Positions 275 through 60,900 of a stretch of DNA of 64,000 bases are shown here, piece after piece. The notes beneath the pieces are model-generated. The model saw only the letters and a program-made list of their open reading frames with translations, was not told where the DNA came from and searched no databases. This stretch comes from Haliotis rubra. Its lineage: Eukaryota. The stretch is from positions 124,001-188,000 of the forward strand of contig NW_025767172.1 of NCBI RefSeq assembly GCF_003918875.1. Reading direction: 5' to 3'. The first letter of the stretch is position 1. Every line of letters begins with the position of its first letter. Both the position numbers and the translations under genes were made by a program.

Positions 275-445
275 CTGGACACATCTGCCTTTGGCAGGGT
301 GTCGTTTCTAGTGCATTGCCATCACATGGCTTTCCACCTATGTCGGGGAAAGGACTGTCACAGTAACGGTGCCTTGTCCTCGTGCCTTTACCACAGCTTA
401 CTGAACATGGTCCCCAGTCCATCCATCCACCCCAGCCGCCATCAG
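275..445 (-). CDS. Exon: thrombospondin type-1 repeat
   Basis: ADGGWGGWMDWGPCSVSCGKGTRTRHRYCDSPFPDIGGKPCDGNALETTPCQRQMCP; phase 1-1, 171 nt. Confidence 0.93.
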
Positions 446-34300: not shown

Positions 34301-37300
34301 CTCACTCAACCACTAGCTACCTCCAATCATGAGCATGGTGACGTACGTTTGACAACAGGCGTGGAATGTAACGAGGCCCGGGGCCATCCTCCGGTCCCTG
34401 TGGTACTTCGGTGTGTGCGTCGCGTGGCATGAGACTTGGCAAGAAGCCTCGTCCTCCACGCTGGAGTTCACTTCATGGTACTGGGAGGAGATGTTGAAAA
34501 ATGTCTGTTCGAAGTCAAATTGCTGCTCCACCGTCCTGAAGAACCCAGGGAACCGCTCACTGACCTGGTCTTCGAGGTTCCCAGTGTGCCTGAAGGGAAG
34601 AGCATCCATTTCATATCATTATTGCTATTAATATTAATGTTTATGGACAGGTTACTTCTAAAGAATTTGAAGTTGTATTACAACTTGATGTTCCTTGTTG
34701 AAATAGAGATTGTGCAAACCGTTACTTTGCAGGAAACATTGATGTTCATTGACATTCTTGTTCATAGCCACTTCACGTGAAAGAAAAAAACATCTTATTC
34801 ATAGCCACATCACGTGAAAGAAAAAAACATCTTATTCACAGCCACGTCACGTGAATTGGTGATGGCATAGTCAGTGCACTCAAAGGAGTAATTACAACAT
34901 TTAATCTGCCACGCCTAAATGGTCCTTACTGCAGTATTTCTACAGGTCTCTCCTACAGGTCTCTTCAATGCCTCTCTCATACAAGGACTGTCGTTTACAT
35001 ACCCTTTTGTACATAAACAGACTGACAAATGTACATACACAAATGTTCGTACACTTCGTCCATAGAAGAATTGACAAATATACTTTTCATATGAGGTTTG
35101 ACGTATGTACCAAGGCTTCTCTCCATATAAGCACTGCCACGTGTACTAACATTTGTTTCCATATCAGTATGGTCATATGTGCTTACACTTCCCTCCATAT
35201 AAGGAGTGTCACATGTGCTTACACTTCCTTCCATATAAGGAGTGTCACATGTGCTTACACTTCCTTCCATATAAGGAGCGTCACGTGTGCTTACACTTCC
35301 CTCCATATAAAGGAGAGTGTGCTTACACTTCCTTCCATATAAGGAGTGTCACTTCCATATAAGGAGTGTGCTTACACTTCCCTCCATATAGGAGAGTCAC
35401 GCGTGCTTACACTTCCCTCCATATAAGGAGCGTCACGTTTGCTTACACTTCCTTCCATATAAGGAGCGTCACATGTGTGCTTACACTTCCCTCCATGTAA
35501 GTACTGTCACATGTGCTTACACGTTCCTCCATATAAGGAGCGTCACTGTGCTTACATGTGCTTACCTTCCATATAAGGAGCGTCACATAAGGAGAGTGTG
35601 CTTACACTTCCTCCATATAAGGAGCGTCACATCCATGTGCTTACACTTCCCTCCATGCTAACAAAGTGAGTGTCACAGGAGAGTGCTTGTTCCTCCATAT
35701 AAGGAGCGTCACGTGTGCTTACACTTCCCTCCATATAAGGAGTGTCACATGTGTGCTTACACTTCCCTCCATATAAGGAGTGTCATAATGTGCTTACACT
35801 TCCCTCCATGTAAGTACTGTCACGTGTGCTTACACTTCCTTCCATATAAGGAGCGTCTTCCCAGCGTCACGTGTGCTTACACTTCCCTCCATATAAGGAG
35901 TGTCACATGTGCTTACACTTCCCTCCATGCTTACAAGGAGTGCCACATGTGCCTACACTTCCCTCCATATAAGGAGCGTCACATGTGCTTACACTTCCCC
36001 TCCATGTAAGTACTGTCACGTGTGCTTACACTTCCTTCCATATAAGGAGTGTCACATTTGCTTACACTTACCTCCATATAAGGAGTGTCACATGTGCTTA
36101 CACTTCCCTCCATGTAAGTACTGTCACGTTTGCTTACACTTTCCTCCATATAAGGAGCGTCACATGTGTGCTTACACTTCCCTCCATAAAATGAGGGTCG
36201 AATATGTTTACACTTCCTTCCATATAAGGAGAGTCACGTGTGCTTACACTTCCCTCCATATAAGGAGCGTCACATGTGTGCTTCCACTTCCTCCATATAA
36301 GGAGTGTCACATGTGCTTACACTTTCCTCCATATAAGGAGCGTCACATGTGTGCTTACACTTCCCTCCATAAAATGAGGGTCGAATATGTTTACACTTCC
36401 TTCCATATAAGGAGAGTCACGTGTGCTTACACTTCCCTCCATATAAAGAGCGTCACATGTGCTTACACTTTTTTCCATCTGAGGAACATATATATTCATG
36501 TTTGTATTTTAACATGTGCTTTCACTGCTTTTGTTATGAGGATTGGCATATGTAACACAATGGAGTGACACATGTGCTTACACTTCTCTCCATGTATGGA
36601 TCGACACATGTACCACAGTGACTGACACACGTATTTATACTTGCCTCCATATGCATTGACACATGTCAACAGATTGACAGATGTACTTACACTTTCCTCC
36701 ATATAAGGATCGATATATGATACATTTTCCACAACAGATTGACAGATGTACTTCTACACTTCCTCTCCATATAAGGATTGATACATTTTACCACAACAGT
36801 CATGCAATTTCTACATGTGTTACATGTACTCTCCATATAAGGATTGATACATTTACCACAACAGATTGACAGATGTACTTCTACATGTACTCTCCATATA
36901 AGGATTGATACATTTACCACAACAGATTGACAGATGTACTTCTACATGTACTCTCCATATAAGGATTGATACATTTACCACACAGATTGACTGATGCTTA
37001 CACTGTACTCTCCATAGGATTGATACATTTACCACAACAGATTGACAGATGTACTTGTACATGTACTTCCATATTTCCTACATTTACCACAACAGATTGA
37101 CAGATGTGCTTACACTTTCTCCATATAGGAGGATACATGTGCTTACATTTGTACTCAACAGATCTGATAAGGATTGAGGTCGAATACATGTCCATATACA
37201 CTTCCTTCCATATACAGAGAGACACGATGTACATTTTACACTTCATGTACCTCCATATACCACAAAGATTGAGAGCGTGATACATTTACCACAACAGATT

Positions 37301-39929
37301 GAACATGATTGATGTACTCTCCAGATGTACTTTCTACACTTTCTCCATATGATTGAACATATATACAACATGTTTGTATTTTAAGATGATGTACTTCTAC
37401 ATGTACTCTCCTATAAGGATTGATACATATGAGGATTGGCATATGTACTCTCCATATAAGGATTGATACATTTACCACAACAGATTGACAGATGTACTTC
37501 TACATGTACTCTCCATATAAGGATTGATACATTTACCACAACAGATTGACAGATGTACTTCTACATGTACTCTCCATATAAGGATTGATACATTTACCAC
37601 AACAGATTGACAGATGTACTTCTACTTCTCTCGATATAAGTATTGACACGTGTACCACAATGGATTGGCACATGTACCACAATGGATTGACACATGTACC
37701 GCAATGGATTGACACACGGATTTATACTTCCCTCCTTATAAGGAATAACACATGTACCACAATGGATTGACAAATGTATTGACACTTCTTTTCAGTGTAT
37801 GGATTGACGCGTGTACCACATTGGATTGGCTGGTGTACTTACACTTCTCTCCAAATAAGGACTGCCAAACTGGTTATGGTTATGACACAGCACAACGTCA
37901 CTATGACAATCTGTAAACACGTAGGAAAGCAACATACACTGCAAATGACATTTACTGTACAATTATTTCGGATTGCAGAACAACGAGAATCCAAGATCCA
38001 ATGGGCAAATTGTAAGCCTGAGATTAAAATGGCACATAGTACGGGATGATCACAGAGTCGAATACATGATTTTGATTTAAGCCACAGCAATATCCCAGTT
38101 ATGCTAAGATGCCTGTCTGTTAACCTGACCAGACAAACCAATGGCCGAGAGAATGAGCACCGATAACAAAAGGTATTAGATGTATTCATTTTCAATAATT
38201 ATTCACCGATTCCTACCCATACGCGTGTCGTGCAGCATGTCTGTGTGGGTGTCTTGTCAGATGCAGCTGCCCGAACACCCGGTGTTGTCACTTGGCCCGC
38301 ACTTAGCACTCTGCTTCCTTGCTTGACCATACTGCTGTGGCATTCAGTGTAGGACTGCTGGGTATCCGGAAACGATTAGGAACGTATTATTCTTCTGTGT
38401 GATCTTGCTGAACTAATACCAGACGTATTTAACAAATTCCAGTATTGATTTCTGATTCACAAGGCAAAACAGGTAGGTTGATGCTGTTTCCATGCAAATT
38501 GGTTTTAATTTGTACTGACAAATCTGAAGTCAGATTTATCGAAGATTATTCTAAACTATATTCAAAAACTCGCTCTATCGAAGATTAATCTAAACTCAAT
38601 ATCGAAAAAAACTTCGCTCTTTAAGCAGTGCAGGATACATACTGTCGTTAAAACTCTTCGTGAGACAATTTGTGATCTGAACACGGTTTTTAGAACAAAG
38701 GGGTGTAGGTATATCCCTGTACTTCTATTTTTGTTATCATACAAATACCATTTCAAAATATCTTTTCACTTTAAGAATGATATTGTCATTTTAATGTTCA
38801 GGTCCAAAATCTGAATCATGCTTTTCTGTGTTACCTTCATCGGGGCTCCAGATAAGGGCCGTATCGGCGTATGTACGGATAAAAAATATGCACGATACAG
38901 TAGGAAATAATTTAGAAAATGTAGCAGATACGCACCACAGCAATGGTTTACGGTCTTAGAATCATTTACAGACGTATTTATCTGAAAAAAATGTTGTTTT
39001 ATTGTTAATTGACCTGTTTACACAAGAGTAGCAATGTTGTGGTGCATATATGAAACGAAACAAGATTACTGATAGTCCATTAACTTCCATTCAGTACTCT
39101 AAATGTACACTTAAGGTTTTCCAGTACTCAGTATTGAACAAATAAGGAGTACGTACTCCTGATGTTGAAAAATTATCTGGAGCCCTGCTTCATTTTATGT
39201 TGTAAAACGATAATAACCTCAGCTTGTATTTATGACGGGTGCCACGGGTGGGGCAGGATATGCTCACACCTGTTCGCGAACATCTGTTATCATCACAACT
39301 TGTTGGTGTTTCATAGACTCATGCTCATTATGTAATAGGAAATGTACAATCGACTTTCCTTTTAGCTCAAATTTCTTAAGGATATGGACTGGGTTTTGCC
39401 GATTCCATATAGCGTGGAAACGGTAAGATTAACAATGTGTGAGTGAATTTGGTTTTACGCCGCACTCAATATTCCAGCTATATGGAAACATATATACACA
39501 AAGAACTTAGTCAAGCACCCCCTGACATAATATCACGATTGAATGAGCCCCGATCTTAACCATTTGGAGAATATTTGTACAGACCCTGGCCCAACTGGAA
39601 GCTGCTTTACACGAGGAATAGCAGGATCAGGAGCCTGACAGAGGGTATAAGGAGGAGGGTGCTGGCTGTCATACAGTCACATGGAGGTTACACTCGGTAT
39701 TGTCCTTGAATCGTGTCAGACACGCAAAATGACATTTTAAATGTTTTCATTCGGCAACATTAAACATTCAACATTAAACATAGAGGATAATTCAGCCAGT
39801 ATGTGACTTTGGAATATACAAACGATTTCCTATTCAGCTGTTAAAAGTTACAAAAACGTAAGTGGTCATTTAAGTAGATGATCCGTTCCCTTACCTTAAT
39901 ACAAGGGTTCCTTCAGAGACTGCCAGCAT
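31196..39929 (-). CDS. Spaetzle/neurotrophin-like cystine-knot precursor (multi-exon)
   Basis: Exons 39929-39895, (39634-39611 micro-exon, uncertain), 34589-34347, 32960-32853, 31349-31196, all joined in phase 2. The mature region after RDRR, ...HACCQTITYFKSKSHLLNVYGEKKKIAQFHTVKQFFKFEQCQHVTNFQYGKCIQRY...WVQVPGCCKCINT, parallels the Spaetzle motifs KQxxxxExC, CxQxY and PxCCKC. Confidence 0.8.
31510..32250 (-). mobile_element. Tc1/mariner remnant
   Basis: RRLNVSLSTISRL...TGRPRVTTVAQDRYI. Confidence 0.8.
32545..32735 (+). mobile_element. Tc1 transposase C-terminal remnant
   Basis: WPSHFQDLNSNEHMSDELGR, a degenerate WPxxSPDLNPIEHxW. Confidence 0.7.
32853..32960 (-). CDS. Middle exon of cystine-knot gene
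   Basis: tttgcag acceptor, gtgagt donor; 108 nt, phase 2-2. Confidence 0.88.
34347..34589 (-). CDS. Pro-domain exon of cystine-knot gene
   Basis: HTGNLEDQVSERF...KYHRDRRMAPGLVTFHACCQT; 243 nt, phase 2-2. Confidence 0.85.
35170..36480. repeat. Minisatellite, 36-bp unit
   Basis: acatgtgcttacacttccctccatataaggagtgtc. Confidence 0.95.
36690..37780. repeat. Minisatellite, ~61-bp unit grading into ~20-bp units
   Basis: atttaccacaacagattgacagatgtacttctacatgtactctccatataaggattgatac. Confidence 0.9.
38841..39187. mobile_element. MITE with (c)agggctccagataa TIRs
   Basis: cggggctccagataa ... ttatctggagccctg, flanked by cttcat on both sides. Confidence 0.8.
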
Positions 39930-40624: not shown

Positions 40625-42914
40625 GATTAATTGGTCTCGAAGGGCTACGTGCCTTGGTCGTGCCAGACCAAGCACAGGGTTTGAGTGCCAGGGGTGTATC
40701 TAAGCTATTTATTATGTTTTGACAATATGTTAATAATGATAATGAGGGCGCCAGGAACCTGTTTGAACCTTTATTGCCTATGCAACATGTTCGATCAAGC
40801 TCGATCGATAGTATTGCGATATGTTTCTCATGCTTATTTTAATCACATAATGATGCCAATGGGGCGATTTGGATATAACACTTATAATCTGATATTTAAT
40901 GATAACGTTGGGATACAGTGAATGAAATATTATCACACAGGTGTTTTAAGTAAAAGTGTTTTCAATACAAAAAGCAGAGTAATCTGATTTATCAGTGAGT
41001 TTGTTTTAAAGCCATTAAGCAATGTTACAGGTATATCACAAGGGGGCGATGCGGTAGTCTAGTGGTTAAAGTGTTAGCTCGTCACACCGGACAACTGGGT
41101 TCAATTTCCCTCATGAGTACAATGTGTGAAGCCCGTTTCTGGTGTCGCCCGCCGTGATATTGCTGAAATAGAGCTACAAGCGGCGTAAAACTAAACCCAC
41201 TCACCCTTTGTAACCACGTGCACCACAGCTGTAATATGACAACGGCCTCTGAACAATAGTCCTCTGATTGACCTTGCCTGTCCTGTGCAGACAATCGAGT
41301 GCCTGCATAATCCTTACCTCACTCAATCAGTAACGTGCTCGGTGATCAAATGTTGAGACGAGGGAGCAATTGTTATGTGTTATTCATTGTGGAACAGTGT
41401 TGTATTTGTACTGCATTGTTTCTGTTAAAATTCAGTAGACAGCAGTGTTCTTGTTACTAAATTAAGACTATAAGTGAAGTTAGGTCTTAAACATTCTAGG
41501 GCATCTGGAATATTCCAGTGTAGTGGGTGATTGAGTGAGTTTAGCTTTACGCCACACTCAGCAATATTCCAGCTATATGACAGTGGTCTGTCTATAATCG
41601 AGTCGGCACCTGACAATCCGGTGATCAACAGCATGAGCATCTATCTACGCAATTGGGATACGATGACATGTGTCAACCAAGTCAGCGAGCCTGACCACCC
41701 GATCCGTTAGTCGCCTCTTACAAGCATGGGTTACTGAAGATCAATTCTAACCCGGATCTTCACGGGTCTATTCCAGTATAGTCTAACGGATAGAGAACGT
41801 ACTGGAGGCTTCTTTAATAACAAACTCGCTAAAGTCTTGCCTCAGTCATATCACAATAACAGAAGACCACCAGTGAAGAGCATTGTTCACCCCGGATTCT
41901 CAGCCTGGGCCTCTTTTTGGAGGCTTGACCACTGCAGCGGGGTGGTGAATATTTTTGTCGATATAATCACTGTATTATTGACTTTTTTGCCATGACCACT
42001 GTTTTATATCACATCATATATTGTACTTCCATTGTAATTTCTTTGTAGTGTAAACTCAGTTCATTTAGAATACAATGGTTATTTGTATATTTCTTTGTTG
42101 TTTGTTGCTTTCCTCCTACATTCTCTGATGTAAACATTTCGGGATAACTCTTTGTTTCAACTCGGTTGGTTGGTTGGTTGGTTGGTTCTTTCCCGCCGCA
42201 CTCCGCAACATTCCAAAATAGCCTTGTGGTTAAAGCGTTGGCTCGTCACGCCGAAGACCCGGGTTCAATTCCACACATGGGTACAATGTGTGAAGCCCAT
42301 TTCAGGTGTTCCCCCTAAAAGCGGTGTAAAATTAAACTCACTCACTCATTTTATGATTAATATATTCGACCCATTTGCCATAATATATTGGACCCATTTG
42401 CCATTTTATTATTGATAGCATGCTAACAGTAGCCGTCCAATGAATCACTGATCGCATGAAAGCTGTGCCAACTTTTATAAATGGTGGCGAGGGGGTGGCA
42501 CCACTGTGAAACTCCCTTCAGACACAATGTACTGACTGAACTCAGCCAGTCTTTGCAAGGCAGGGTACCTAGAAATACCATTATTTATGGTATACTGGTC
42601 TGACACTGTTGAGGGATTGATACTTGCCCTCTGTCCATGCCTGCTAAGGTCGTCTTTAAACATAGAATCATACAGTACATTAAATAATCAAGGATGGATT
42701 TTATGGCACTTTAATCAACATGCCTCCAGTTCGGGCCTTAAGTGAGGTGAGGTGATAAGATGCCTGAACTGATCCACCTCTTCCACAAGGTCAAGGTCAA
42801 GGTCATCAACAACGGCAATATGATCCTAGAAGTCAAAGATGTAGTGTCCAAAAACAACAGTAGGGTAAGTGCCCAGAGATATTTGAGGTTTGTTCCAAAA
42901 GCATCTGGATCTTA

Positions 42915-43255
42915 AGTGAGGTGAAATGGGGTTTAAGGTAGTGCTTCAGAATATTTTGCTCATATGACGACAGGCATGCGTGTGTATGTGTGGCTGCTTG
43001 TACTAGCCCAGACTTAAGCTGTTTTTTATTGCTAACTCACTGAGATACCATGCCGCAGTGAAGCATGAATACCCACTCAGACACATTATACTGACTCCGA
43101 GCCGACCAGTCCTTGTTGTACCCATTAATGCCAAGCACCAGGCAGGGACCAACAAGTACCATATTTTAACGTTTTTTGGTATGATGCGGCCGGGGATCGA
43201 ACCTGCGACCTTCCGCTCCCAGAGGGACGCTCTAACCACTAACCATGGAGGCGGT
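42915..43255 (-). mobile_element. SINE family C copy
   Basis: Reverse complement of 5945-6295. Confidence 0.85.
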
Positions 43256-44858
43256 TGGTCATTTAAATATTTGAATTTGAAAAACAATGACAGGGAGATC
43301 TGAGTACAAATCTGACAATTTATTGTCAACACTCACAGAATGCTTTGAGTAAAGGCGCAGGTTACATACAAAACGATCAAATCCCTCACATTCCCACTGA
43401 ATAATTGTCTCATTCATTTCAAACAAATACACACTGAGAATTAAGTGTTCACAGGCTGTCAATACAAGGTCACCAATTCAAAATAAATTCATAAATCAAC
43501 ATTCACATGATGTCATATTTTAACCTGGGCCTTTTTTTAAATTCAAATACTTCAGGAGTGCAAAATATTTTAATAAATGTAAAACATGATGAAATGGGTG
43601 AAATGTACAAGACACATTTGGGGCCCAAAATATGAAAAACATGAAAATCAGCAGAAACATAGAACTGAAATTACAACATGCCTACAATCCTCTCAAAGAA
43701 ATGTATATATATTTTCAAAGACTTGGACAAAATCTTATCTTGAAAACAAAATAAGGAAAAACTATACATCATGTTCTCCAATATTTTTTTTTTCAAATAA
43801 AATAGTTAACAGTAAAAATAATGTACTTGACAAAAAATGTTTTCACCAAATGAAAAACCAATAAACACTAGACTTGGACATACTGGAAGTCCCAGGAAGT
43901 TTTTTTTTCTTCTCATTTAACATTGCAGTGTTAAACTGTCAATGATTCCTCTAAATACATAGAAAAAAATTGACATGGTACTAATCACAAGGTCATGAAA
44001 CCTTTAATAGAAATATTATAGAAATCTATAGCACTAATGAAATTCACTGTCATGTCTTGAGCGTCTGCCGTTTTGATAGACACTATATTGTTCCTATTTT
44101 CATCAGAGTAATGAGAATCAACACCACCTTGAACTGCCAAAGGACACATAACAAGTTGGACACCCATTGTAATACATAGCATTCACATCTAATCTGACAA
44201 TACCTGGGCAATACATGGCTATCATTTTAAACTGGAGGTCAGAAAACAATACCGCAGTCTCATTCATTACCAAAGCAATGGACGGGTCAGGGACAATAGC
44301 TTTCAGATACCTTTTCTCTGTGGAATTATTCAGTTGAATTTATAGCTCACATACTGTAGTGAGTGAGTTTAGTTTTACGCGGCACTCAGCAATATTCCAG
44401 CTATATGGCAGCAGTCTGTAAATAATCCAGTTAGGACCAGACAATCCAGTGACCAACAGCATTAGCATTGATCTACACAATTGGGATACGATGACATGTG
44501 TCAACCAAGTCAGCGAGCCTGACCACCCGATCCTGTTAAGTCTCCTACAACAAGCATGGGTTACTGAAGATCAATTCTAATTGCGATCTTCATGGTTCGT
44601 CACTTACTGTAAAGTACACTTATAACAAACCCATATTTTAATATACACATATACAGTAAGTGTCTGGTACCTAAAAACACATTTTGCTACATCGGTTAGT
44701 TCCATCAGAATGTTCATAATCATAGTTTATTGTACATTTACACAATGACATCATCAATGATCCTGATTTTGCAGATGTAATTACTGTCAGTCTAATTTCG
44801 CTTTGCACTGAAATGTATGTTTCTTTACCACTTCTATCTCAGAATAATTATGAGTACA

Positions 44859-45022: not shown

Positions 45023-46669
45023 TGAAATAACCTTACCTACAGAACACACTCTTGTAAATGAAACTCATCAGGTTCTTGGCCCAGTGTCTGGTATACACAA
45101 TTCCAATACTGATACCTATGATTCTTCCCCAGAAACCAAACAAAAGCACTCAGTGGCATTCACGGACATAATGCTGGTCAAGTTTGGACACCACGATATT
45201 GCTGTATTTTTGCTGAAAATTCTCAAAGCTATACTCCCTCACTCTATGTCCTGAAATTAGGTTAACAGAAAATTATACCATAATATTTCTCTACTGTTGC
45301 TGAACAAATGCAAAGCTACACTCACTTACTAACTCTACGTCCTGAATTAATGATAACAGAAAATTATACCAAACTGTCCCCAAAAATAGGCAAAGCAAAC
45401 AACTGCTCAAAAAAATATAGCAGTCATGATAAACAATGGCCTTAACTTTTTATATCAATTCCAATCGCACCATTATTGTCAAAAAAGATCTTCCTAGGAA
45501 CGTCATAAGCACTGAGATGAACACAGTGAGTATTATCAGCAGTCAAAACACCACTGCCGATATATTCTCAATACAACTGTGAAAATATGTTAAATATGTT
45601 TTTCTTGAATATTAATCTCACAGCTGTCAGCACTGCTAAAACTAGTATTATTTACAAGCACTGATAGAGTTTCTTTGGAAAAAAGGAGCATTTTGTAATG
45701 TGGAAACGTGCCTTCAGTTCTTGTATTCCTTTAACGAAAATATTTCTTTAAATGTTTGTTGTTCAAGGCCACTTAGAAAACTCTTAGTAATAATACAGTA
45801 ATCTGTGACCAGACAGAACCAGACAATCCAGTGACTAACATCATGAGTATCGATCTATGCTAATGGCATATCAACTGATTCTTCAATCCTGATCACCAAA
45901 TAAGTTGTCACCATGGGTTAAATTTTAGCAAATCATTTTCAAACTTCCTGAATGAATAATGTCGAACATGCATCAAAGAGGGAGTGCACTCATACATCCC
46001 CTCTTAAATTGCATATAATTACATGTGCCATGTCACTGGTCGGTGTTTCACCTTACATATTGTTGAGGTACTACTTATATAATACTGACTGACTGACTGA
46101 GTTTAGTTTTACGCTGCTTTTAGCAATATTCCAGCAATATCACGGCTGGGGACACCAGAAATGGGCTTAACACATTGTGCCCATGTGGATCGGAACGAGC
46201 AAACGCTTTAACTACTAGGCTACCCCACCGCCCCTACTTATATAATAATAAATATATAATAAAGTATTGATATCAACAGGATACAGTCTGGTGTGCCTCA
46301 CACAAAACACATCTAACAACTGATTAAACAATCAGTACATTGTCCACGACCTGATGGCATGACATTGCTTGCATCTATTTTTAGATGTAATGTGGGAATT
46401 ACTGATTACAAATTATAGTGAACACATAAAAATGTGTCGCCTCAAAGTAGACTTCTTGTGATTAACTCAGACCTTCAAATCAACTACTCCTCGGTAATCT
46501 ACTGAACTAGGGAGATTTTGAGTGTTTTGCTTAACACCACCGTGGCAATATTCTGGATGTACACTACACACTCCAGTTACTGAAATTATGAGCAAATGAT
46601 CTCTGCTGTACATGTACGCTGGGACCAAGCTGGGAACACCATGCTGGAAACACTATAGTATGTACAAGA

Positions 46670-47800
46670 TGCTGGGGCCACCAGGCTCTGACTCCAAACT
46701 AGGAATACCAGACAGTATACACCGTGCTGGGGCCACTAGGATCTGACTCTATCCTGAGAACACCAGTGTACACCGTGCTGGGGCCACTAGGATCTGACTC
46801 CATCCTGGGAACACCAGACAGTGTACACCGTGCTGGGGCCACTAGGATCTGACTCCTATCCTGGGAACACCAGTGTACACCGTGCTGGGGCCACTAGGAT
46901 CTGACTCTATCCTGAGAACACCAGACAGTATACACCGTGCTGGGGCCACTAGGTTCTGACTCTATCCTGAGAACACCAGTGTACACCCTGCTGGGGCCAC
47001 TAGGTTCTGACTATATCCTGGGAACACCAGACAGTGTACACCATGCTGGGGCCACTAGGATCTGACTCAATCCTGGGAACACCAGTGTACACCGTGCTGG
47101 GGCCACTAGGATCTGACTCAATCCTGGGAACACCAGACAGTGTACACCGTGCTGGGGCCACTTGGATCTGACTCTATCCTGAGAACACCAGACAGTGTAC
47201 ACCGTGCTGGGTCCACTAGGATCTAACTCAATCCTGGGAACACCAGACAGTGTACACCGTGCTGGGGCCACTATGCTCTGACTCCATCCTGAAAACACCA
47301 GATAGTGTACACCATGCTGGGGCCACTATGCTCTGACTCCATCCAGAAAACATGAGATAGTGTACACCGTGCTGTGTCCACTAGGATCTGACTCTATCCT
47401 GAGCACACCAGACAGTGTACACCGTGCTGGGGTCACTAGGTTCTGACTCTAGCCTGAGGACACCAGACAGTGTACACCATGCCGGGGCCACTAGGCCCTG
47501 ACACCATCCTGGGAACACCAGACAGTGTACACTGTGCTGGGTCCACCAGGCTCAGGCTCTGACTCCATGCTGGTAACACCAGACAGTGTACAACGTGCTG
47601 GGTCCATTAGGCTCTGACTCCATCCTGGGAACACCAGACAGTGTATACCACAGCTGGGTCCACTAGGCTCTGACTCCATGCTGGGAACACCAGACAGTGT
47701 ATACCATGCTGGGGCCACTAGGCTCTGATTCAATCCTGTGAACACCAGTGTACACCGTGCTGGGTCATGTAGGCTCATGTAGGAACACCATGCAGTGTAC
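46670..47800. repeat. Minisatellite, 51/55-bp unit
   Basis: ccagacagtgtacaccgtgctggggccactaggatctgactctatcctgggaaca. Confidence 0.95.
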
Positions 47801-48944
47801 ACCATGACAGACATTCTTGTACATACAAACATAACTCTGATTAACAATAATAATCTTGCCAGGAATCAAAATGTAACCATGACCTAACAGTGATAATATC
47901 TTTATGTGGAAAATCAGTTTATGAATAGCTCAAGCCAATTTCGTTGCAGATTCATTGAAAAAAAGAAAAGCATGATCTTAAGTACATTAACAAACCGAGG
48001 ACCTCCTCGTGACATTTACTTAGGACTTAAAAAGTATAATACGTTATATATATTTCCAGACATATTTAAAGGAGAAACCATTTGATATTTAGGGATTGGG
48101 GCTGGAACAAACAAGTAATTTTTTATTCACGGCCAAACTGAGGTGGAGCAAAACTTTCCTTCAAGTTCAGTGCATGATTAGTAATTGTTTTATATTTATT
48201 TTCTTGGTGAATAGTTGCATCCCACACCCAATATCCGTAAAACATCAAATGGTTCATCACTCACTAAAAGCTGTTTTCGTGTGTGTCAACATTAAGCTTT
48301 AACCCTTGAAATACTTTGATTTGCTTGTACGTGAAGTGCACAATATAAATTTCATGAAATGAAAATGAGTTACAAATGCATCTTGAAAGTTTCAGTATGT
48401 TTAAAATACCAGACACTTAAAAGAAAAACATTCAAGAAACAAAACATATTCCATAATGTTCAACAAAGTGCACAAACAATCATCACAATTCTTTGACGGA
48501 TGGTATTTTTATTGTTCATGATTCCAAAGGAACATATCAGAGGGAAAACCTGATTATTGTTTGGTGAAAGCGCCACATTTTGGGGACAACACCCAATCCA
48601 TCCCCCATTGTGGCTTCAGGACCAAAATGATCACTCTCCTGCAACCTTCAATCGCAGACTTGAGCACAACACCAGCTGAGATTCACCTCAGCATAATTAA
48701 AATCACACATGATTATCCATGATCGGCACCAATGGAAGAAATCAAACAAAGGTGCCTTGGAAGTCAGTCTTCCCTCACTCCTGAAATCACTTTTATATAT
48801 ATATTCCTACATACACATAGATTTATTTATTTCAAGCAATCAACAAAGCACTTGTACCTTGTGTCAGCTGCATGCAACATGGAATGACAGCTGGGGTACA
48901 TTTCAAGACAGCCTGTGAACACACCATAGTCATGATAATCAAAC

Positions 48945-51900
48945 TCAGTGCCTTCGCCTATTTCTTTCACGATCACGGTCCCTACCAACATCTTTATCAA
49001 CCTCGCGATCACTCCGATCGCGATCTGATGTTCGTTGTTTATGTTTCAACTTGAGCCCATCCCCCTGTCCATCAAAGCGTCCGTCATTCTGTCTGTCTCG
49101 GCGCATTTCATTAACAGGTGACCTAAGTTTTTTATTATTTCTACGGTCTGTCCTTTCGTCAAACTGATTGTCCAGCCGATGATTTCGATCGATAGGTTCT
49201 CGATTTCTATCGCGTCTGTTTTCAGTCTCACGTCTAGTGTCTGACACTCGATTATCACGAGTCCGTCTATCCCAGGAATCAGTGTACATTTCGTCATCAC
49301 GCACTTGTCGGTAATTGTCAGTTCGGAGTCTTCCCTTCTCGGTTTTTCGTAGTCCATGTCTTCTTCCTCCTGTTCATTTCTTCTCTTCTTCTTCTTGTTC
49401 TCTCTATTGCTGTGATGACTGTAGTCTCCGTTGGCATATTCTCGTCTGTGTCTTCTGCTGTCCTGGTCGGAGTTTTCCTCTTTGCTGCTGTGCTTGGTCT
49501 TGGCTGCTGGCTTGCTTTTCTTCTTCTTCCTTGTCTCTGTCTCTGAGCCTGAGTCTGATGAGCTGCTGTCAGAGTCTAAAACAGATGGAAACATTGTTCA
49601 GATATCTGGCTTGAACATAAAGACAGTTGCCATAAGTCCTGAAGTAAAGCTCCATATTAACAAGCTAGAGAAGCCTTCCAACCAAGTTATGTAAAAATAA
49701 TCATAGACCAAATTCATTCAAGAAACCTCCCAACAAAAGGGTTCATGCACTATGAAGCCCCAACATCTTCACATGTGATGATCACCGGCCTATACTGCTG
49801 CATTACCCCCACCATCTACACCTGGGATGATCACCAGCCTATACATCTGCATTACCCCCACCATCTACACATGGGATGATCACCAACCTATACAGCTGCA
49901 TTACCCCCACCATCTACACATGTGATGATCACCAGCCTATACTGCTACATTACCCCCACCATCTACACCTGTGATGATCACCAGCCTATCCTGCTACATT
50001 ACCCCTACCATCTACACCTGTGATGATCACCAGCCTATACTGCTACATTACCCCCACCATCTACACCTGTGATGATCACCATGCCTATCCTGCACCATCT
50101 ACACTGGTGATGATTAGCCTATCCTGCTACATTACCCCCACCATTACCTGTGATGATCACCATCTACACCATTACCCCACCATCACCTGTGATGATCACC
50201 AGCCTATCCTGCTGCATTACCCTGCTATCTGCATTACCCCACCATCTACACCTGTGATGATCACCAGCCTATCCTGCTACATTACCCCCACCATCTACAC
50301 CTGTGATGATCATCAGCCTATCCTGCTGCATTACCCCACCATCTACACCTGTGAGTGATGATCACCAGCCTATCCTGCTGCATTGCCCCACCACACCTGT
50401 GATGATCACCAGCCTATCACTGCTGACATTACCCCCACCATCTACACCTGTGATGATCACCAGCCTATCCTGCTACATTACCCCACCACCATCTACACCT
50501 GTGATGATCACCAGCCTATACTGCTGCATTACTGCCCCACCATCTACACCTGTGATGATCACCAGCCTATCCTGCTACATTACCCCACCATCTACACCTG
50601 TGATGATCACCAGCCCCACCATCTACACCTATCCTGCTACATTACCCCCACCATCTACACCTGTGATGATCACCATGCCTATCCTGCTACATTACCCCCA
50701 CCATCTACACCTGTGATGATCATTACCCACACCATCTACACCTGCTGCATTGCTGCATTACCCCACCATCTACACATGTGATGATCACCAGCCTATACTG
50801 CTACATTACCCCCACCATCTACACCTGTGATGATCACCAGCCTATCCTGCTGCATTACCCCCACCATCTACACCTGTGATGATCACCAGCCTATCCTGCT
50901 GCATTACCCCCACCATCTACACCTGTGATGATCACCAGCCTATCCTGCTACATTACCACCCACACATCTGACACCTCCTGATGATACACCAGATCACCAG
51001 CCTATCCTGCTACATTACCCCACCATCTACACCTGTGATGATCACCAGCCTATCCTGCTACATTACCCCTACCATCTACACCTGTGATGATCACTAGTCT
51101 ATACTGCTGCATTACCCCCACCATCTACACATGTGATGATCACCAGCCTATACTGCTACATTACCCCCACCATCTACACCTGTGATCAACACCAGCCTAT
51201 CCTGCTGCATTACCCCCACCATCTACACCTGTGATCAACACCAGCCTATCCTGCTGCATTACCTGAGTCAGAGCTGTTGCTGGAGGAGGAGCTGTCACTA
51301 TCGGAGCTGTCACTATCTGATGAGTCCGATGAAGACTCAGATTCCTGCTGCTGTTGCTGTTGTTGCTGCTGCATCAGCTGTTTGGTCATTGTCTTCAGGT
51401 GGTCACGAAGATCATCCCTGTGATGAGGATGTTGTTGGAATTACATTGTCAATTCATATACACTTCCTGACAGGGCAGATATTTACTAAAATAGCCTGTC
51501 CTCTACAATTCTTAAAGAAAATAATTTTCTCAAAAGAGAATGACATATTATAGTGTGGCAACACACATGACTAATTTCAAATGTAATTGATAAAGTACTA
51601 TCAGTCTCCAATTTAAAGCATGTGTAAATGACTGAATTAAAATATGTCATTAGTGGTAAATAGGAAGTTTTAGTCAATTTACACTTACGTTAGTCCTCCA
51701 AGACCGATTGTTGTAAAAAAGTTTATAGCAAAACGCGTATTCTTGGGATTATCCCGCGGCATGATTCCTTCAAAATATTCTTGAAGTGTTCTGAAACCAG
51801 AAACAAACATATGATGACGAGACTGCTGACAAATAACATCAAACATTACATTGGCCATTCATTCATCAGTCTTTCATGAAGCCTTCCACAAACCACCATG

Positions 51901-54900
51901 AAACCCTGCATCAAACCACCATGAATCCATGCATAAAACCACCATGAATCCATGCATCCAACCACCATGAATCCATGGACCACCATGAAGCCCTGCCCTC
52001 ACACCATAGTGAATCCCTGCATCAAACCACCATAAATCCATGGATCAAACCACCATAAATCCATGGATCAAACCACCATAAATCCATGGATCAAACCACC
52101 ATGAATCCATGGATCAAACCACCATAAATCCATGGATCAAACCACCATGAATCCATGCATCCAACCACCATGAATCCATGCATCCAACCACCATGAAGCC
52201 CTGCCCTCACACCAAAGTGAATCCCTGCATCAAACCACCATAAATCCATGGATCAAACCACCATAAATCCATGGATCAAACCACCATGAATCCATGGATC
52301 AAACCACCATGAATCCATGGATCAAACCACCATAAATCCATGGATCAAACCACCATGAATCCATGGATCAAACCACCATGAATCCATGCATCCAACCACC
52401 ATGAAGCCCTGCCCTCACACCATAGTGAATCCCTGCATCAAACCACCATAAATCCATGGATCAAACCACCATAAATCCATGGATCAAACCACCATGAATC
52501 CATGCATCCAACCACCATGAATCCATGCATCCAACCACCATGAAGCCCTGCCCTCACACCATAGTGAATCCCTGCATCAAACCACCATAAATCCATGGAT
52601 CAAACCACCATAAATCCATGGATCAAACCACCATGAATCCATGCATCCAACCACCATGAAGCCCTGCCCTCACACCATAGTGAATCCCTGCATCAAATCA
52701 ACAAGAAACCATGCCCTCAAAACATAGTGAAAGCCTACCCTCAAACCAACATAAAATCCTGCCTTCAAACCACCATAAAACCCTGCCCTCAAACCACAGT
52801 GAATCCCTGCCTCAAACCACCATGAACCCAGTCCTCATACCATAGTGAAGTCCTGCCTCAAAACCCATAGGGAGTGAGCGAGTTAAAGATTTTAAGTCAC
52901 ATCGGCAATATTTCAGTCCTATCATGACCAAAACCCATAGGAACAATGAAACACTGCTCCTTTTTTATGTCATTCCTGTTTTTTATCAGCAGGGCTACTA
53001 CAAATAGTAAAACGTCTCCCAGTAACAAAACAATATCAGGAATCAAACCTCGATCATTCATGTGTGCTTATCCAACTGCCTCACTTTAGGTAGGAAAGAA
53101 GGTCTCTTTAATCCCACAAGCTTTTATTGTTACTGAGTCAGCTTCAGACAATGTAACTTCCAGATCAAAGAGTTGAGAAATTCTCATTTCTCTACCAGCA
53201 CAAAAAGAAGCCATCAATACAACAAAGTCAACTAAAATCATGACATGAGTGATGAAATACACTAATTTACTTACGGGTCTTTGAGACGATCATTGAGCTT
53301 TGGCAAACCCATGTATTCGGATAATTCCTGGAACAAGATCTTGATGAAGATCCTACTGGCTGATGTCGTGTCCTCCTCATTCAGCTTCACACACACCAAC
53401 ACCTACACAGAAATGCTCATGGTCAATCTGATCAGCCTTAACTCCAGACATAACAAACATCATGTGACCTCTGTTTGCTACGACTGAATGAGGTTACTTG
53501 TCATGACAGAACCCAATAGTGAGTGAGTGAGTTTAGTTTTACACCACACTCAGCAATATTCCAGCTATGTAGCAGCAGTCTGTAAATAATCAAGTCTTGA
53601 CCAGACAATCCAGTGATCAACTGCATGAGCATCAATCTACGCAGTTGGGATACGATAACGTGTCAACCAAGTCAGTGAGTCTGACCACTCGATCCCATTA
53701 GTGGCCTCTTACAAGGACGGGATGTTGAAGATCAATTCTTACCTGGATCTTCACGGGTTGTAAAACCCAATAACACAGGTATGGTGCTAACAAACCAAGA
53801 CTCGTAATCGTGTTGAACTGGATTCAAAGTTATGTTCAAGCATGTTCGTACTGTCTGTTGAAAGAAGAACTGTCTGCCAATCTGTCTAAACCCATAACAT
53901 ACACAAAACATAATGTTCCACCTTGAAGTAAGTGAATGAGCAAGTTTAGTTTTACGCTGCACTGAGCATATTGCAGCTATATGGCAACGGCCTGTAAATA
54001 ATCCAGTCTGGACCATACAATCCAGTGATCAACATCATGAGCATCAATCTATGCAATTGGGATTTGAGGACTGACCACCCTATCCCCTTAGCTGCCTCTT
54101 ACGACAAGCGTTGGTTAATGAAGATCAATTTTGACCCAGATCTTCACGGGATGTTCCACCTTAAAAGGTAAGTCTTCAATGAATGATTTTTTTCCATTTA
54201 AGAAAGATACGATGACTAATCAAGCATATAGATTACCACAGAGGTTAAACTGCAAATGTCTACAGTATGTTAATATTTAAAGTTTTTCAACATAGATATT
54301 ACCACACATCTAACAAAACATTGTTTAAGAACAAAGGCAGGATATGACAACTCACCCCCCAGCTGATGGCATCACTGTAGAGAAGATGACCGAAGAATTT
54401 AGCAACGTTCCTCAGTTTGTTTGTCTCCAGTCTGTGAATGGTCTCATACTGTTCTATGAAAGTGGTCTGGAATGGCTCCACGTACTTCTTGTCCAGTTGA
54501 CAGAAACGCTGAGAGAATCATAGAGGTGTCAATGTCTTATTTTCACAGAGAATCATGTCCTTAAATCAGAGGATAATTTATGTTATTGTAACATCATTTA
54601 ATAAAGAACTGTAGCAGTAAAACATGAACTAAATAAATTTCAGACCTATCAAGGTCTATCAGCTAAATATGTGAGGAAAGCCTGCAGGCGATTCGAATGA
54701 ATGAGTCAGTGAGTGAGTTTAGTTTTACTCCGTACTCAGCAATATTCCACCTATATGGTGGCGGTCTGTAAATAATCGTGTCACGACCGGACAATCCAGT
54801 GATCAACAGCATGAGCATCAATCTGCTCAATTGGGAACAGATGACGTATGTCAACCAAGTCAGCGAACCTGACCACCCAATCCCATAGTCGCCTCTTACG

Positions 54901-57900: not shown

Positions 57901-60900
57901 ATTGTCTTTTATATTCACAAACACAAATTCAAAGTTCAGAAGATGACAAGGAGGTCAGGCCTGGAAATGGACATGAAAGCTCTGATGCATGAAATACACA
58001 ATGCCATTTTAGAAAGTGGTCAAATGTAACATATGATATATTTGGGATTACACTTTCTCTATAAAGTACAGATTCTAGTACTTTTGGTTGAGTCCCATCC
58101 GGTATTAGCTTTCGGACGTGGGAGCCATGCCAATTAACACTTATCAGAGGGGTACACAAAGTCCGCAGTCTAGACTACCAGTTGTCCGACTTCCATTTTT
58201 TGTGGAAGACACGGTGGCTGAGCGGTCTAGGCGTCTGACTTTGTGTGCTGGCGATTAGGTGCCTCTCTCTGAGGGTGTGGGTTCGAATCCCGGATGGGAC
58301 TCAACCCCTAAAAAGTACTAGAATCTGTACTTGACTGAGAAAGTGTAATCCCAAATATAACATATGTTATATTTCTGATGCAATTACTTAACTACCAAGC
58401 CAACATATCCACTTGACATTGTACAAACCTTCCTCATCTTCATCACTGTCTTCCTCGCTGCTGGACCCCGATCCGCTCTCCCCTTCATCAGAGCTGCACT
58501 CTTCTAGAATCTCTGCAAGGAGTGAGTGAGTGAGTGAGGTTAGTTTTACACAGCTTTTAACAATATTCCAGCAATATTACGGAGAGGTACCAGATTATTG
58601 TGTTTTAAGTTATCAAAAATAGAGTGTAAATGTCAAAGGAGATGTTTTACGTCACAGTCTGTAGTAATCCAGCCATATCAAGTTGGCTGCAAATAATCAG
58701 TCATTCAATCCGTTGATCGACTGCATGACAACCAACCACACTGTCGGAGCACAATGACATCCAATCAACCAGGTCAAACATTGTAACCACTCAATCCTCA
58801 TCTAACAGACCTGGTGTCTGCAAGACTTCCCAGTATAATGTTTGGAAGGGTTGGCCATCTAGAAACTCAATACATTCCATACATGCAAAACAACCATTTG
58901 ATCCTTTCCCTTGTATAACACTGGACGCAGATTCTAACTGCTGCCATGAGAGCTATGCATGTGCATCAGTACATTAGTTCAATCTCCACACCTCTCTTGA
59001 GAGACTTGTACTTGTCTTCATTTTCCAAATAGTCTGGATCAGCTCGAAACACATCTGAAACATACACAAAGATGTTATGAGTTCATTAGTACATGACCAT
59101 CATGCATTGCTGCACCTGTTCATACATGCATACATTCCCATAGCACACCGAAACAGAAGGAACTTTGGGGAAAGTGAGTGAGTGAGTTGGGTTTACGCCA
59201 CTTTTTGTAACATTCCAGCAATATCACGGCGGGGTACACCAGAAATGGGCTTCACACATTGTACCCATGTGGGGAATTGAACCCCGGTCTTCGTCGTGAT
59301 GAGCGAACACTTTAACCATAAGGCTTAACCATACACAAAGATAGTGCCACATAACACTTTAAATGATGTATGATAATCTTTCATGACCAATGTTTAGAGC
59401 AACCAGTTGCCTTTGCTCCAGACATGGAGAACGGTTCTTGTCAGTCCAGATATTGGCATTAGGTTACCAAGTTACTGCATAGAATAGACAATTATTTCTT
59501 ATTTGGTGTCTCAAATTCTTTATGCAACAGATATCACAGGTCATTACAAAAAATTCATAAACACGAGTAAATAGTTACTGGTACAAGTCCAATACACATT
59601 CACTCACTGTGGCCATATAATCCCCAATAAAGCGCCTGTAATGCTTACCCACTAAGGCCCTATAATCTCCTGTCAAGACTGAGTCATATTTAACTAGAGG
59701 GCTGTCTAATCCCCAATCAGTTCTGATCACACTAAGGCTATCTCATCTACAGTCAGGTTCAAATCATATTTGGCCACTGAGGATGTCTACTCGAAAAACA
59801 AGTGTGAATAATACTGAGGCTATCTAATCCTCAATCAGTTCTAATCATACTGAGGATATCTAATCCCAAACAAGTTTGAATCATTCTGAGGATATCTAAT
59901 CCCCAATGAAGGTCTAATCATACTTAGCCGCAGAGGCTATCTAATCCTCAATCAGTTCTAATCATATGGAGGTTATCTAATCCCCAAGCAAGTTCTAATC
60001 ATACTGAGGATATCTAATCCCCAATCAAGGTCTAATCACATGTATTGAGGCCATTGAAGCTATCTGATTCTCAACTAAGTTGTATTTCCACTCAGACATT
60101 AGGAACACCTGATACTTGGGAACTACTAGCAATTAGTTTGTACTCTTTTCCTTGTAAATCTGTATGAAAGTGTGAGTGGAGGACTACAAATAATTACTCA
60201 GGAGGTCCTCTGACTGCACAGCATCTTCCAGGGTGATGAGATGTGTGAACTGATCCACCTCTTCCACAAGGTCAAGGTCATCAACAACGGCAACATGATC
60301 CTAGAAGTCAAACATGGTTCGTGTGTAGTATCCAAAAACAAAAGTGGGGTAGGTGCCCAGAGATATTTGGGGATTGTTCGAACAGTATGTGGATCTAAGG
60401 ACATCCTGAATCTTCAACGAAATCAGGCCAACAACAAAGTCGCTTTGACTTTTAAAATAATAATCAAGATATAACAAGAAACCACATAGTCCATGATCTT
60501 GATAATAAGCTCTTGAACTGAATGTCCAGAAGTCATTGATATAAGCTTTTGAACTGTGAGTGATTGAGTTTGGTTTTACACCGCTTTCAGCACATTTCCA
60601 GCAATATCATAGCAGGGGACACCAGAAATGGGCTTTACACATTGTACCCATGCGGGGAATCAAACCCAGGTCTATAGCATGATAGGCGGATGCTTTAACC
60701 CATGTATGTCAAGAATTCAGTAAAACAATTTGTCACTTTCACAATAAAATAAACCCATACCTTGAAGCCGTCTTTCCGGATAGCAAACATCACCTCCACC
60801 ATGTACTGGACCCGAGTGTCAATCATGCCTTCATGCAAAATGTTACGCAGGCGCTCAAATATTGCTGAAATGACAAAGCGTGTTCACCTAGTATTTTCAC

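What the first reader, a model, noticed from the sequence alone, without database searches (positions are those of the whole stretch)
42737..42924. CWC22 exon/intron fragment copied 17 kb away into a SINE tail, with a 14-bp direct repeat
42751-42910 is a diverged copy of ~60232-60395 (5' part of the [18 protein letters not shown] exon plus ~95 nt of upstream intron). It is flanked by cttaagtgaggtga on both sides, joins through GGTGA microhomology with the family C tail, and has the orientation of cDNA from unspliced CWC22 RNA. With 489-716 and 7325-7778/40752-41203, that is three local captures in 64 kb, all at SINEs. This suggests target-primed reverse transcription or templated repair using nearby nascent transcripts, a possible source of exon shuffling (inference). 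DNA-templated end joining is the main alternative.
Basis: partly seen in the sequence, partly recalled or inferred. Interest (0 to 1): 0.72.

Follow-up and report, generated by a model that had tools for sequence, protein, structure and literature searches.

The report
Old CWC22 fragment inserted at SINE tail
A 160-base piece of the abalone CWC22 gene (part of one exon plus the intron before it) was copied long ago into the repeat tail of a mobile element 17.5 kb away. The insertion scars look like those the mobile-element machinery makes, but it is one old, apparently inert event of a broadly known kind.

Summary
Window 42751-42910 is a diverged copy (about 90% identical, two indels) of 60232-60396. 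That donor is the 5' part of a CWC22 exon plus about 96 nt of the upstream intron. These are the only two copies in the 1.38-Gb genome. The exact 14-mer CTTAAGTGAGGTGA flanks the copy.

The neighbouring "family C" element is a minus-strand SINE at 42916-43262. Its tail and internal repeat match the Haliotis MESC SINE. Its (TCACC)n tail reads (GGTGA)n on the + strand.

In 25 of 29 other family C copies I found target-site duplications of 9-15 bp. They usually overlap the tail by 1-3 nt, and 15 of 25 have A after the nick. The CWC22 copy has the same architecture.

Contigs from public runs of three species labels carry the insertion. It is therefore fixed, older than their split, and not a misassembly.

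- **Best reading (about 0.45):** aberrant target-primed reverse transcription by the SINE's partner LINE, using unspliced CWC22 RNA.
- **Main rival (about 0.35):** copying from nearby DNA by template switching.

The retained intron and the nearby donor leave RNA against DNA undecided. The two other "captures" are real two-copy local duplicates but are built differently. The closest known class is the human class 1 templated sequence insertion. Interest is modest. Earlier scan notes on this genome supplied only leads.

The parts
42737..42750 (+). Left copy of the 14-bp target-site duplication CTTAAGTGAGGTGA. It consists of 5 nt of old flank plus 9 nt of SINE tail.
   Evidence: exact, and only two copies in the window. 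Organism B has lost it through a secondary 29-bp deletion at 42722-42750.
42751..42825 (+). Exon-derived part of the insert, antisense of CWC22 codons [18 protein letters not shown]...; it begins with GGTGA, which equals donor 60232-60236.
   Evidence: 64/68 identical. It contains a 6-bp GGTCAA tandem duplication near 42786 that is absent in organisms B and C.
42826..42910 (+). Intron-derived part of the insert, a copy of donor 60301-60396 that includes the 3' splice site.
   Evidence: 78/89 identical, with a 9-bp indel.
42911..42924 (+). Right copy of the 14-bp duplication. Its last 9 nt are the short (GGTGA)n tail of the SINE.
   Evidence: Contigs of organism A (two samples) and organism B bridge it.
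42916..43262 (-). Family C SINE, identified as a Haliotis MESC SINE. On the + strand the tail is at the left and the tRNA-like head at the right.
   Evidence: at least 6371 candidate copies in the genome. K2P 0.070 to the family consensus. PMC4758252 reports a (CACCT)n tail and an internal (CA)n repeat; other copies give a weak full-length tRNA match of 23 bits.
60232..60396 (-). Donor: the 5' 69 nt of the CWC22 exon (60198-60300) plus about 96 nt of the upstream intron.

Best explanation
This is an ancient, fixed insertion made by a mis-templated retrotransposition event. The proposed steps are:
1. The endonuclease of the LINE that mobilises the MESC SINE nicked the + strand exactly at the tail/body junction of a resident SINE copy (...GTGAGGTGA|AATGGGG).
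2. The freed GGTGA 3' end normally pairs with the (UCACC)n tail of SINE or LINE RNA. Here it paired with a single UCACC inside an unspliced CWC22 transcript.
3. The reverse transcriptase copied about 160 nt, from the exon back across the 3' splice site into the intron.
4. The cDNA end joined the other side of the target through a 2-nt CT overlap. The second-strand cut lay 14 bp upstream, which produced the 14-bp duplication.

What is shown: the copy, the donor, the duplication, the microhomologies, the match to the family's own insertion signature, and the age. What is inferred: that the LINE enzyme was the agent and that the template was RNA.
For: - The 14-bp duplication lies within the 9-15 bp range of 25 family C copies (median 12).
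- In 20 of those 25 copies, the 3' end of the duplication overlaps the GGTGA tail by 1-3 nt. Here the primer end is a full tail unit and the insert starts with GGTGA.
- The base after the nick is A in 15/25 family C targets against a 31% background (p 0.002). Here it is AA.
- The insert's + strand is the cDNA sense of the minus-strand CWC22 gene, with the priming microhomology on the correct side.
- The site lies downstream of the donor in the direction of transcription.
- The per-lineage age of the copy (about 5-7%) matches the SINE copy's age (K2P 0.070 overall, 0.036 at non-CpG sites). The family was therefore plausibly active at that time.
- A second composite in the window (452-728) fits template jumps by a reverse transcriptase. 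It is a SINE 3' fragment, then 72 nt of a local intron, then a full SINE, all inside one 11-nt duplication.
- Human class 1 templated sequence insertions show that LINE enzymes can insert intronic or intergenic transcripts with target-site duplications (PMC5110952).
Against: - No feature proves an RNA intermediate. The intron is retained, and no tail repeat beyond one unit is present.
- The donor is only 17.5 kb away on the same strand. That is natural for DNA template switching. For RNA it requires the extra assumption that local nascent transcripts are preferred.
- The site lies about 6 kb past the last coding exon, probably beyond the cleavage site. A tethered nascent transcript is therefore less obvious there.
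- With a perfect GGTGA primer, the expected product is another SINE copy, not a CWC22 fragment.
- The tail/body junction is not a marked hotspot. Only 3 exact head-to-tail family C junctions were found genome-wide.
- The supporting features were recognised after the fact, at a single locus.
Confidence: 0.45

Rival explanations
1. DNA-templated insertion by template switching during replication or break repair (FoSTeS/MMBIR or synthesis-dependent strand annealing). A nascent + strand ending in ...GGTGA left its template and annealed to GGTGA at 60232-60236. It copied about 160 nt of genomic DNA, then returned 14 nt behind its point of departure through the CT(T)AAG similarity. That return duplicated the 14 nt.
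For: - The donor is in cis, 17.5 kb away, in direct orientation, and retains its intron.
- There is microhomology at both junctions: 5 nt and 2 nt.
- The other local event at 452-728 can be read the same way, as a 38-nt flanking duplication with return through (TGAG)n homology. A 38-nt duplication lies outside the 9-15 bp LINE-type range seen in family C.
- One mechanism would then cover both events.
Against: - It gives no reason for the break to lie exactly at a SINE tail/body junction.
- It gives no reason for the duplication to match the family's length range.
- It gives no reason for the A after the nick.
- It gives no reason for both local events to be in sense-cDNA orientation and downstream of their donors.
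- A 9-nt tail is too short to be a plausible fragile microsatellite (inference).
Confidence: 0.35
2. A single chimeric retrotransposition event. The reverse transcriptase began on a SINE RNA 3' end, jumped to CWC22 RNA, then jumped back to the 3' end of a SINE RNA and copied the whole SINE. On this reading the repeated 14-mer is a twice-copied RNA end rather than a target-site duplication.
For: - The architecture matches the composite at 452-728: SINE 3' fragment, local intron piece, full SINE, inside one 11-nt duplication.
- The SINE and the insert are of indistinguishable age.
- The SINE's own target-site duplication cannot be recognised at this locus.
Against: - The 5 nt CTTAA are not part of the family C tail in any of 29 other copies. 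They would have to come from a read-through 3' flank of a source copy.
- No duplication flanking the whole 42737-43262 unit is detectable.
Confidence: 0.1
3. Assembly artefact or chance similarity.
For: None found. There is only a single-base disagreement: the assembly has C at 42763 while all four runs read T.
Against: - The blastn E-value is 2e-46.
- The copies are about 10% diverged with indels, so they are not a collapsed or duplicated read set.
- Independent contigs from two samples of organism A and from organism B bridge both junctions. Organism C bridges the left junction.
Confidence: 0.02

Closest known systems
Human class 1 templated sequence insertion polymorphisms (LINE-1 ORF2p acting in trans on intronic or intergenic transcripts; PMC5110952)
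   Same: A short non-repeat fragment from a transcribed region, including intron sequence, is inserted with a LINE-length target-site duplication at a nick site of the type the LINE prefers.
   Different: There is no poly(A) and no cryptic polyadenylation signal. Priming appears to use one unit of a (TCACC)n-type tail at an internal RNA site. The donor is local (17.5 kb), not distant. The event is fixed and ancient, not polymorphic. An RNA intermediate is not demonstrated.
Chimeric retrogenes made by LINE reverse-transcriptase template switching (U6/L1 chimeras; tripartite chimeras in Magnaporthe, PMC2104539, title and abstract only)
   Same: The LINE enzyme copies a non-cognate cellular RNA. 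The composite at 452-728 resembles a double template jump.
   Different: Known partners are abundant small or highly expressed RNAs from elsewhere in the genome. Here the partner would be unspliced pre-mRNA of the neighbouring gene.
Microhomology-mediated template switching (FoSTeS/MMBIR) and class 2 templated insertions at double-strand breaks
   Same: The template is nearby, there are 2-5 nt microhomologies at both junctions, and the intron is retained.
   Different: Class 2 events lack target-site duplications (PMC5110952). Here an exact 14-bp duplication of LINE-typical length sits at a SINE tail.
Haliotis MESC SINE (Matetovici et al. 2016, PMC4758252)
   Same: The recipient element has the reported (CACCT)n terminal repeat and an internal (CA)n microsatellite. 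It also has Pol III box A and box B-like motifs in a tRNA-like head.
   Different: The paper does not identify the partner LINE, and neither did I. I did not align the MESC core domain itself to a published consensus.

Membership tests
LINE-mediated (target-primed) insertion of a non-LINE RNA | Target-site duplication of the length made by the responsible LINE | tested here: met
   The duplication is 14 bp. In 25 family C copies it is 9-15 bp, median 12.
LINE-mediated (target-primed) insertion of a non-LINE RNA | Nick-site preference of the endonuclease | tested here: met
   A follows the nick in 15/25 family C targets (p 0.002). Here the sequence is GGTGA|AA. This is a single-base criterion, so it is weak.
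LINE-mediated (target-primed) insertion of a non-LINE RNA | Priming junction carries the 3' feature used by the LINE (tail repeat or poly(A)) | tested here: inconclusive
   Only one GGTGA unit is shared with the donor, and it lies at an internal position of the transcript, not at an RNA 3' end.
LINE-mediated (target-primed) insertion of a non-LINE RNA | Evidence of an RNA intermediate (intron loss, RNA 3' end) | tested here: not met
   The copy spans an unspliced intron/exon boundary. This is compatible with pre-mRNA but equally with DNA.
DNA template switching (FoSTeS/MMBIR) | Microhomology at both junctions and a nearby template in cis | tested here: met
   Microhomologies are GGTGA (5 nt) and CT (2 nt). 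The donor is 17.5 kb away in direct orientation, and there are only two copies in the genome.
Class 2 templated insertion (break repair patch) | No target-site duplication; microdeletion or untemplated bases at the junctions | tested here: not met
   There is an exact 14-bp duplication and no untemplated bases.
Haliotis MESC SINE (recipient element) | (CACCT)n terminal repeat and internal (CA)n microsatellite | tested here: met
   Tails of 9-55 nt of GGTGA units on the complementary strand occur in 29 copies. A TG/CA-rich stretch is visible in the alignment.
Haliotis MESC SINE (recipient element) | tRNA-derived head and MESC core domain | tested here: inconclusive
   Rfam gives a full-length tRNA match of only 23 bits, below the gathering score of 29. 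ARAGORN finds none. The core domain was not compared with a published consensus.
CWC22 (donor gene) | Sequence homology to CWC22, including the MA3 domain | tested here: met
   The donor exon aligns to human CWC22 residues 349-382 (E 1.4e-5). The neighbouring exon matches CWC22 at E 8e-15. MA3 scores are above the Pfam cut-off.

The most novel reading that the evidence does not exclude
In abalone, LINE reverse transcriptases that prime on short tail repeats recurrently copy nascent, unspliced RNA of the gene being transcribed nearby into or beside SINE tails. This would be a cis-local, RNA-templated patching process that moves splice sites, branch-point regions and exon pieces within and just beyond their own genes. 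The two sense-oriented events downstream of their donors in this 64-kb window (42737-42924 and 452-728) would be examples.
Probability: 0.2. Interest if true: 0.7.

Novelty: new member of a known kind. Interest (0 to 1): 0.35.

Why it matters
If the RNA reading is right, a LINE that does not depend on poly(A) can prime on a five-base match inside a neighbouring gene's unspliced transcript. It would then paste exon/intron boundaries nearby, which is a possible route for moving splice signals in SINE-rich mollusc genomes. As it stands this is one old, fixed and apparently inert insertion whose template (RNA or DNA) cannot be decided from sequence. Its main value is a precisely characterised locus and a measured insertion signature for the Haliotis MESC SINE: duplications of 9-15 bp, tail-unit overlap, and A after the nick. 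A genome-wide test could use that signature.

Tried and rejected
- **Genome survey.** I planned to fetch 2-4 Mb of the genome for local two-copy duplicates with flanking duplications. The frequency claim is therefore untested.
- **Tail/body junction as a hotspot.** A pattern search for head-to-tail family C junctions found only 3 genome-wide, against 0 in the reversed control. There is no marked hotspot.
- **The SINE's own target-site duplication at this locus.** No candidate beats shuffled controls. This test could not separate a nested event from a single-event origin.
- **Empty-site allele.** None was seen in contigs of four runs from three species labels.
- **tRNA and bacterial scans.** ARAGORN found no tRNA in the SINE heads. 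The bacterial promoter/terminator scan is irrelevant to an animal genome.
- **Reverse direction.** I rejected the idea that the CWC22 exon derives from the 42.7-kb copy, because the exon is conserved with human CWC22.
- **DNA-transposon excision footprint with filler DNA.** I rejected this from general knowledge, untested here: 14 bp is not a usual transposase duplication length, and it matches the SINE family's range.
- **Donor extending through CTAAGG into the tail with no duplication.** I rejected this because it needs two specific later substitutions to recreate CTTAAG.
- **RNA-seq support.** No RNA run held the stretch.

Full report
**Observation**

Reading the two places and aligning them shows that window 42751-42910 is homologous to 60232-60396.
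- blastn of the region against the window gives E 2e-46.
- A gapped global alignment gives 139 identical of 154 aligned bases.
- The copy carries a 6-bp tandem GGTCAA duplication, and there is a 9-bp indel in the intron-derived part.
- A search of the whole 1.38-Gb assembly finds only these two places.
- The 14-mer CTTAAGTGAGGTGA lies at 42737-42750 and 42911-42924 and nowhere else in the window.

**What the donor is**

The donor lies on the minus strand.
- Positions 60198-60300 form an exon whose translation ([34 protein letters not shown]) aligns end to end with human CWC22 residues 349-382 (E 1.4e-5 to 5e-5).
- Neighbouring minus-strand exons match CWC22 (E 8e-15) and the MA3 domain above Pfam's cut-off.
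- The sequence shows a 3' splice site (ttctag|G) at 60301-60304.
- The copied stretch is therefore the first 69 nt of the exon plus about 96 nt of the preceding intron, unspliced.
- CWC22 exons run from above 60838 down to a last coding exon at about 48945-49594.
- The insertion site is thus not in an intron. It lies about 6 kb downstream of the coding region, in the same orientation as the gene.

**What the recipient is**

blastn within the window and a four-way alignment show that 42916-43262 belongs to a roughly 340-nt repeat with three copies in the window.
- The genome holds at least 6371 candidate copies.
- The right end carries Pol III box A and box B-like motifs. Other copies give a weak full-length tRNA match (23 bits; ARAGORN finds none).
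- The left end is (GGTGA)n. The element therefore lies on the minus strand with a (TCACC)n tail.
- A published survey states that Haliotis MESC SINEs terminate in (CACCT)n and contain an expanding (CA)n microsatellite (PMC4758252). Both features are present. I did not test the MESC core domain itself.
I did not verify this.

**Insertion signature of the SINE family**

I examined 29 other copies with flanks.
- 25 have clear target-site duplications of 9-15 bp (median 12).
- In 20 of the 25, the 3' end of the duplication overlaps the GGTGA tail by 1-3 nt.
- Tails are 9-55 nt long.
- The base after the nick is A in 15 of 25, against a 31% background (binomial p 0.002).

The CWC22 fragment has the same architecture.
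- It is flanked by a 14-bp duplication made of 5 nt of older flank plus 9 nt of tail.
- The insert begins with GGTGA, and the target continues with AA after the nick.
- At the far junction, donor GGATCT|AAGG meets target CTTAAG with a 2-nt overlap.

**Age and reality**

- The exon-derived part differs at 4 of 68 positions and the intron-derived part at 11 of 89 (K2P 0.062 and 0.135).
- That pattern is expected if the donor exon is constrained and both intron copies drift. It gives about 5-7% per lineage.
- The SINE copy is 0.070 (K2P) from its family consensus, or 0.036 at non-CpG sites. The ages are statistically indistinguishable.
- Public runs from three coded species labels hold the stretch.
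- Contigs from two samples of organism A and from organism B bridge both junctions.
- A contig of organism C, about 9% diverged, bridges the left junction.
- No joint skipping the insert was reported.
- Organism B has a 29-bp deletion that removes the left 14-mer. This is secondary, because A and C keep it.
- B and C lack the GGTCAA duplication, so it arose in the A lineage.
- All four runs read T at 42763 where the assembly has C.
- The insertion is therefore fixed, older than the split of these species, and not a misassembly.

**Mechanism**

Three readings remain.

1. *Nested aberrant target-primed reverse transcription.* The partner LINE's endonuclease nicks at the tail/body junction. The GGTGA 3' end pairs with UCACC in unspliced CWC22 RNA, 160 nt are copied, and a second nick 14 bp upstream gives the duplication.
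   - This explains the duplication length, the nick context, the tail location and the orientation.
2. *DNA template switching.* The strand departs at GGTGA, copies from the nearby donor, and returns 14 nt upstream.
   - This explains the cis-local donor and the retained intron without extra assumptions.
   - It does not explain the LINE-like scars.
3. *A single chimeric event with two template jumps.*
   - It is disfavoured because CTTAA is not part of the SINE tail in any of 29 copies.
   - It is not excluded, because the SINE's own duplication cannot be recognised here.

I put these at about 0.45, 0.35 and 0.10. The weights are judgement. The features favouring reading 1 were recognised after the fact at one locus. 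Known LINE-mediated captures in humans are not local (PMC5110952).

**The other two "captures"**

- *490-561.* This is an 89%-identical copy of 3317-3388, again two copies in the genome.
  - It consists of the last 72 nt of an intron of a minus-strand gene with TSP1 and EGF-like exons.
  - It sits between a 38-nt 3' fragment of a (TCAC)n-tailed SINE (452-489) and a full copy of that SINE (563-728).
  - The whole unit is flanked by an 11-nt duplication, ATCAG(C/T)TGCAA (441-451 and 730-740).
  - It can be read as a double template jump by a reverse transcriptase, or as a later insertion with a 38-nt duplication.
  - Like the CWC22 event, it is in sense-cDNA orientation and downstream of its donor.
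- *7324-7781 against 41204-40749.* This is an inverted two-copy duplicate.
  - Its SINE part (24/162 mismatches) is more diverged than its unique part (20/293).
  - I found no convincing flanking duplication.
  - It remains unresolved.

The pattern is suggestive, but the three events are not the same.

**Limits**

- A pattern search showed only three exact head-to-tail family C junctions, so the tail/body junction is not a strong hotspot.
- No RNA run held the stretch.

**Verdict**

- The event is a new member of a known kind. It is closest to human class 1 templated sequence insertions and to LINE template-switch chimeras.
- Interest is modest unless a genome-wide test shows recurrence.

Noticed in passing
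window 441-740 and 3317-3388: This is a composite insertion: a 38-nt SINE 3' fragment, a 72-nt copy of the 3' end of an upstream intron of the same gene, then a full (TCAC)n-tailed SINE. It is flanked by an 11-nt duplication that contains the 3' splice site (ttgcag|CT) of the TSP1-repeat exon ending near 445. The SINE tail now lies directly upstream of that acceptor. The copied intron end, which may include branch-point and pyrimidine-tract sequence, lies about 45-115 nt upstream and could compensate for the disruption.
   Followed up: partly
window 7324-7781 and 40749-41204: This is an inverted duplicate with only two copies in the genome, made of a SINE plus 293 nt on its head side. The SINE part is 14.8% diverged but the unique part only 6.8%, and CpG sites do not explain the difference. 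No clear flanking duplication was found.
   Followed up: partly
window 42763: The assembly has C, but contigs of all four laid runs (three species labels) read T, which is the donor's base. This is probably an assembly base error or a private variant.
   Followed up: no
window 42722-42750 and 42786-42791: Organism B carries a 29-bp deletion that removes the left copy of the duplication. The 6-bp GGTCAA tandem duplication in the insert is present only in organism A.
   Followed up: no
L005-L033 (family C copies genome-wide): This is a measured insertion signature for the Haliotis MESC-type SINE. Duplications are 9-15 bp, 20/25 overlap the tail unit by 1-3 nt, and A follows the nick in 15/25. 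It suggests annealing-guided priming and an endonuclease preference for N|A.
   Followed up: yes
window 49660-51360, 51860-52880, 35080-37860, 46660-47840: Large minisatellite arrays with periods of 49, 23, 36 and 55/107 bp. The first two lie inside CWC22 introns, next to its RS-rich last exon.
   Followed up: no
G000 C669:1411894-1411944, C2624:305752-305802, C2744:324714-324756: These are the only three exact head-to-tail family C junctions found genome-wide, where a second copy starts within 2-24 nt of the head of another.
   Followed up: no
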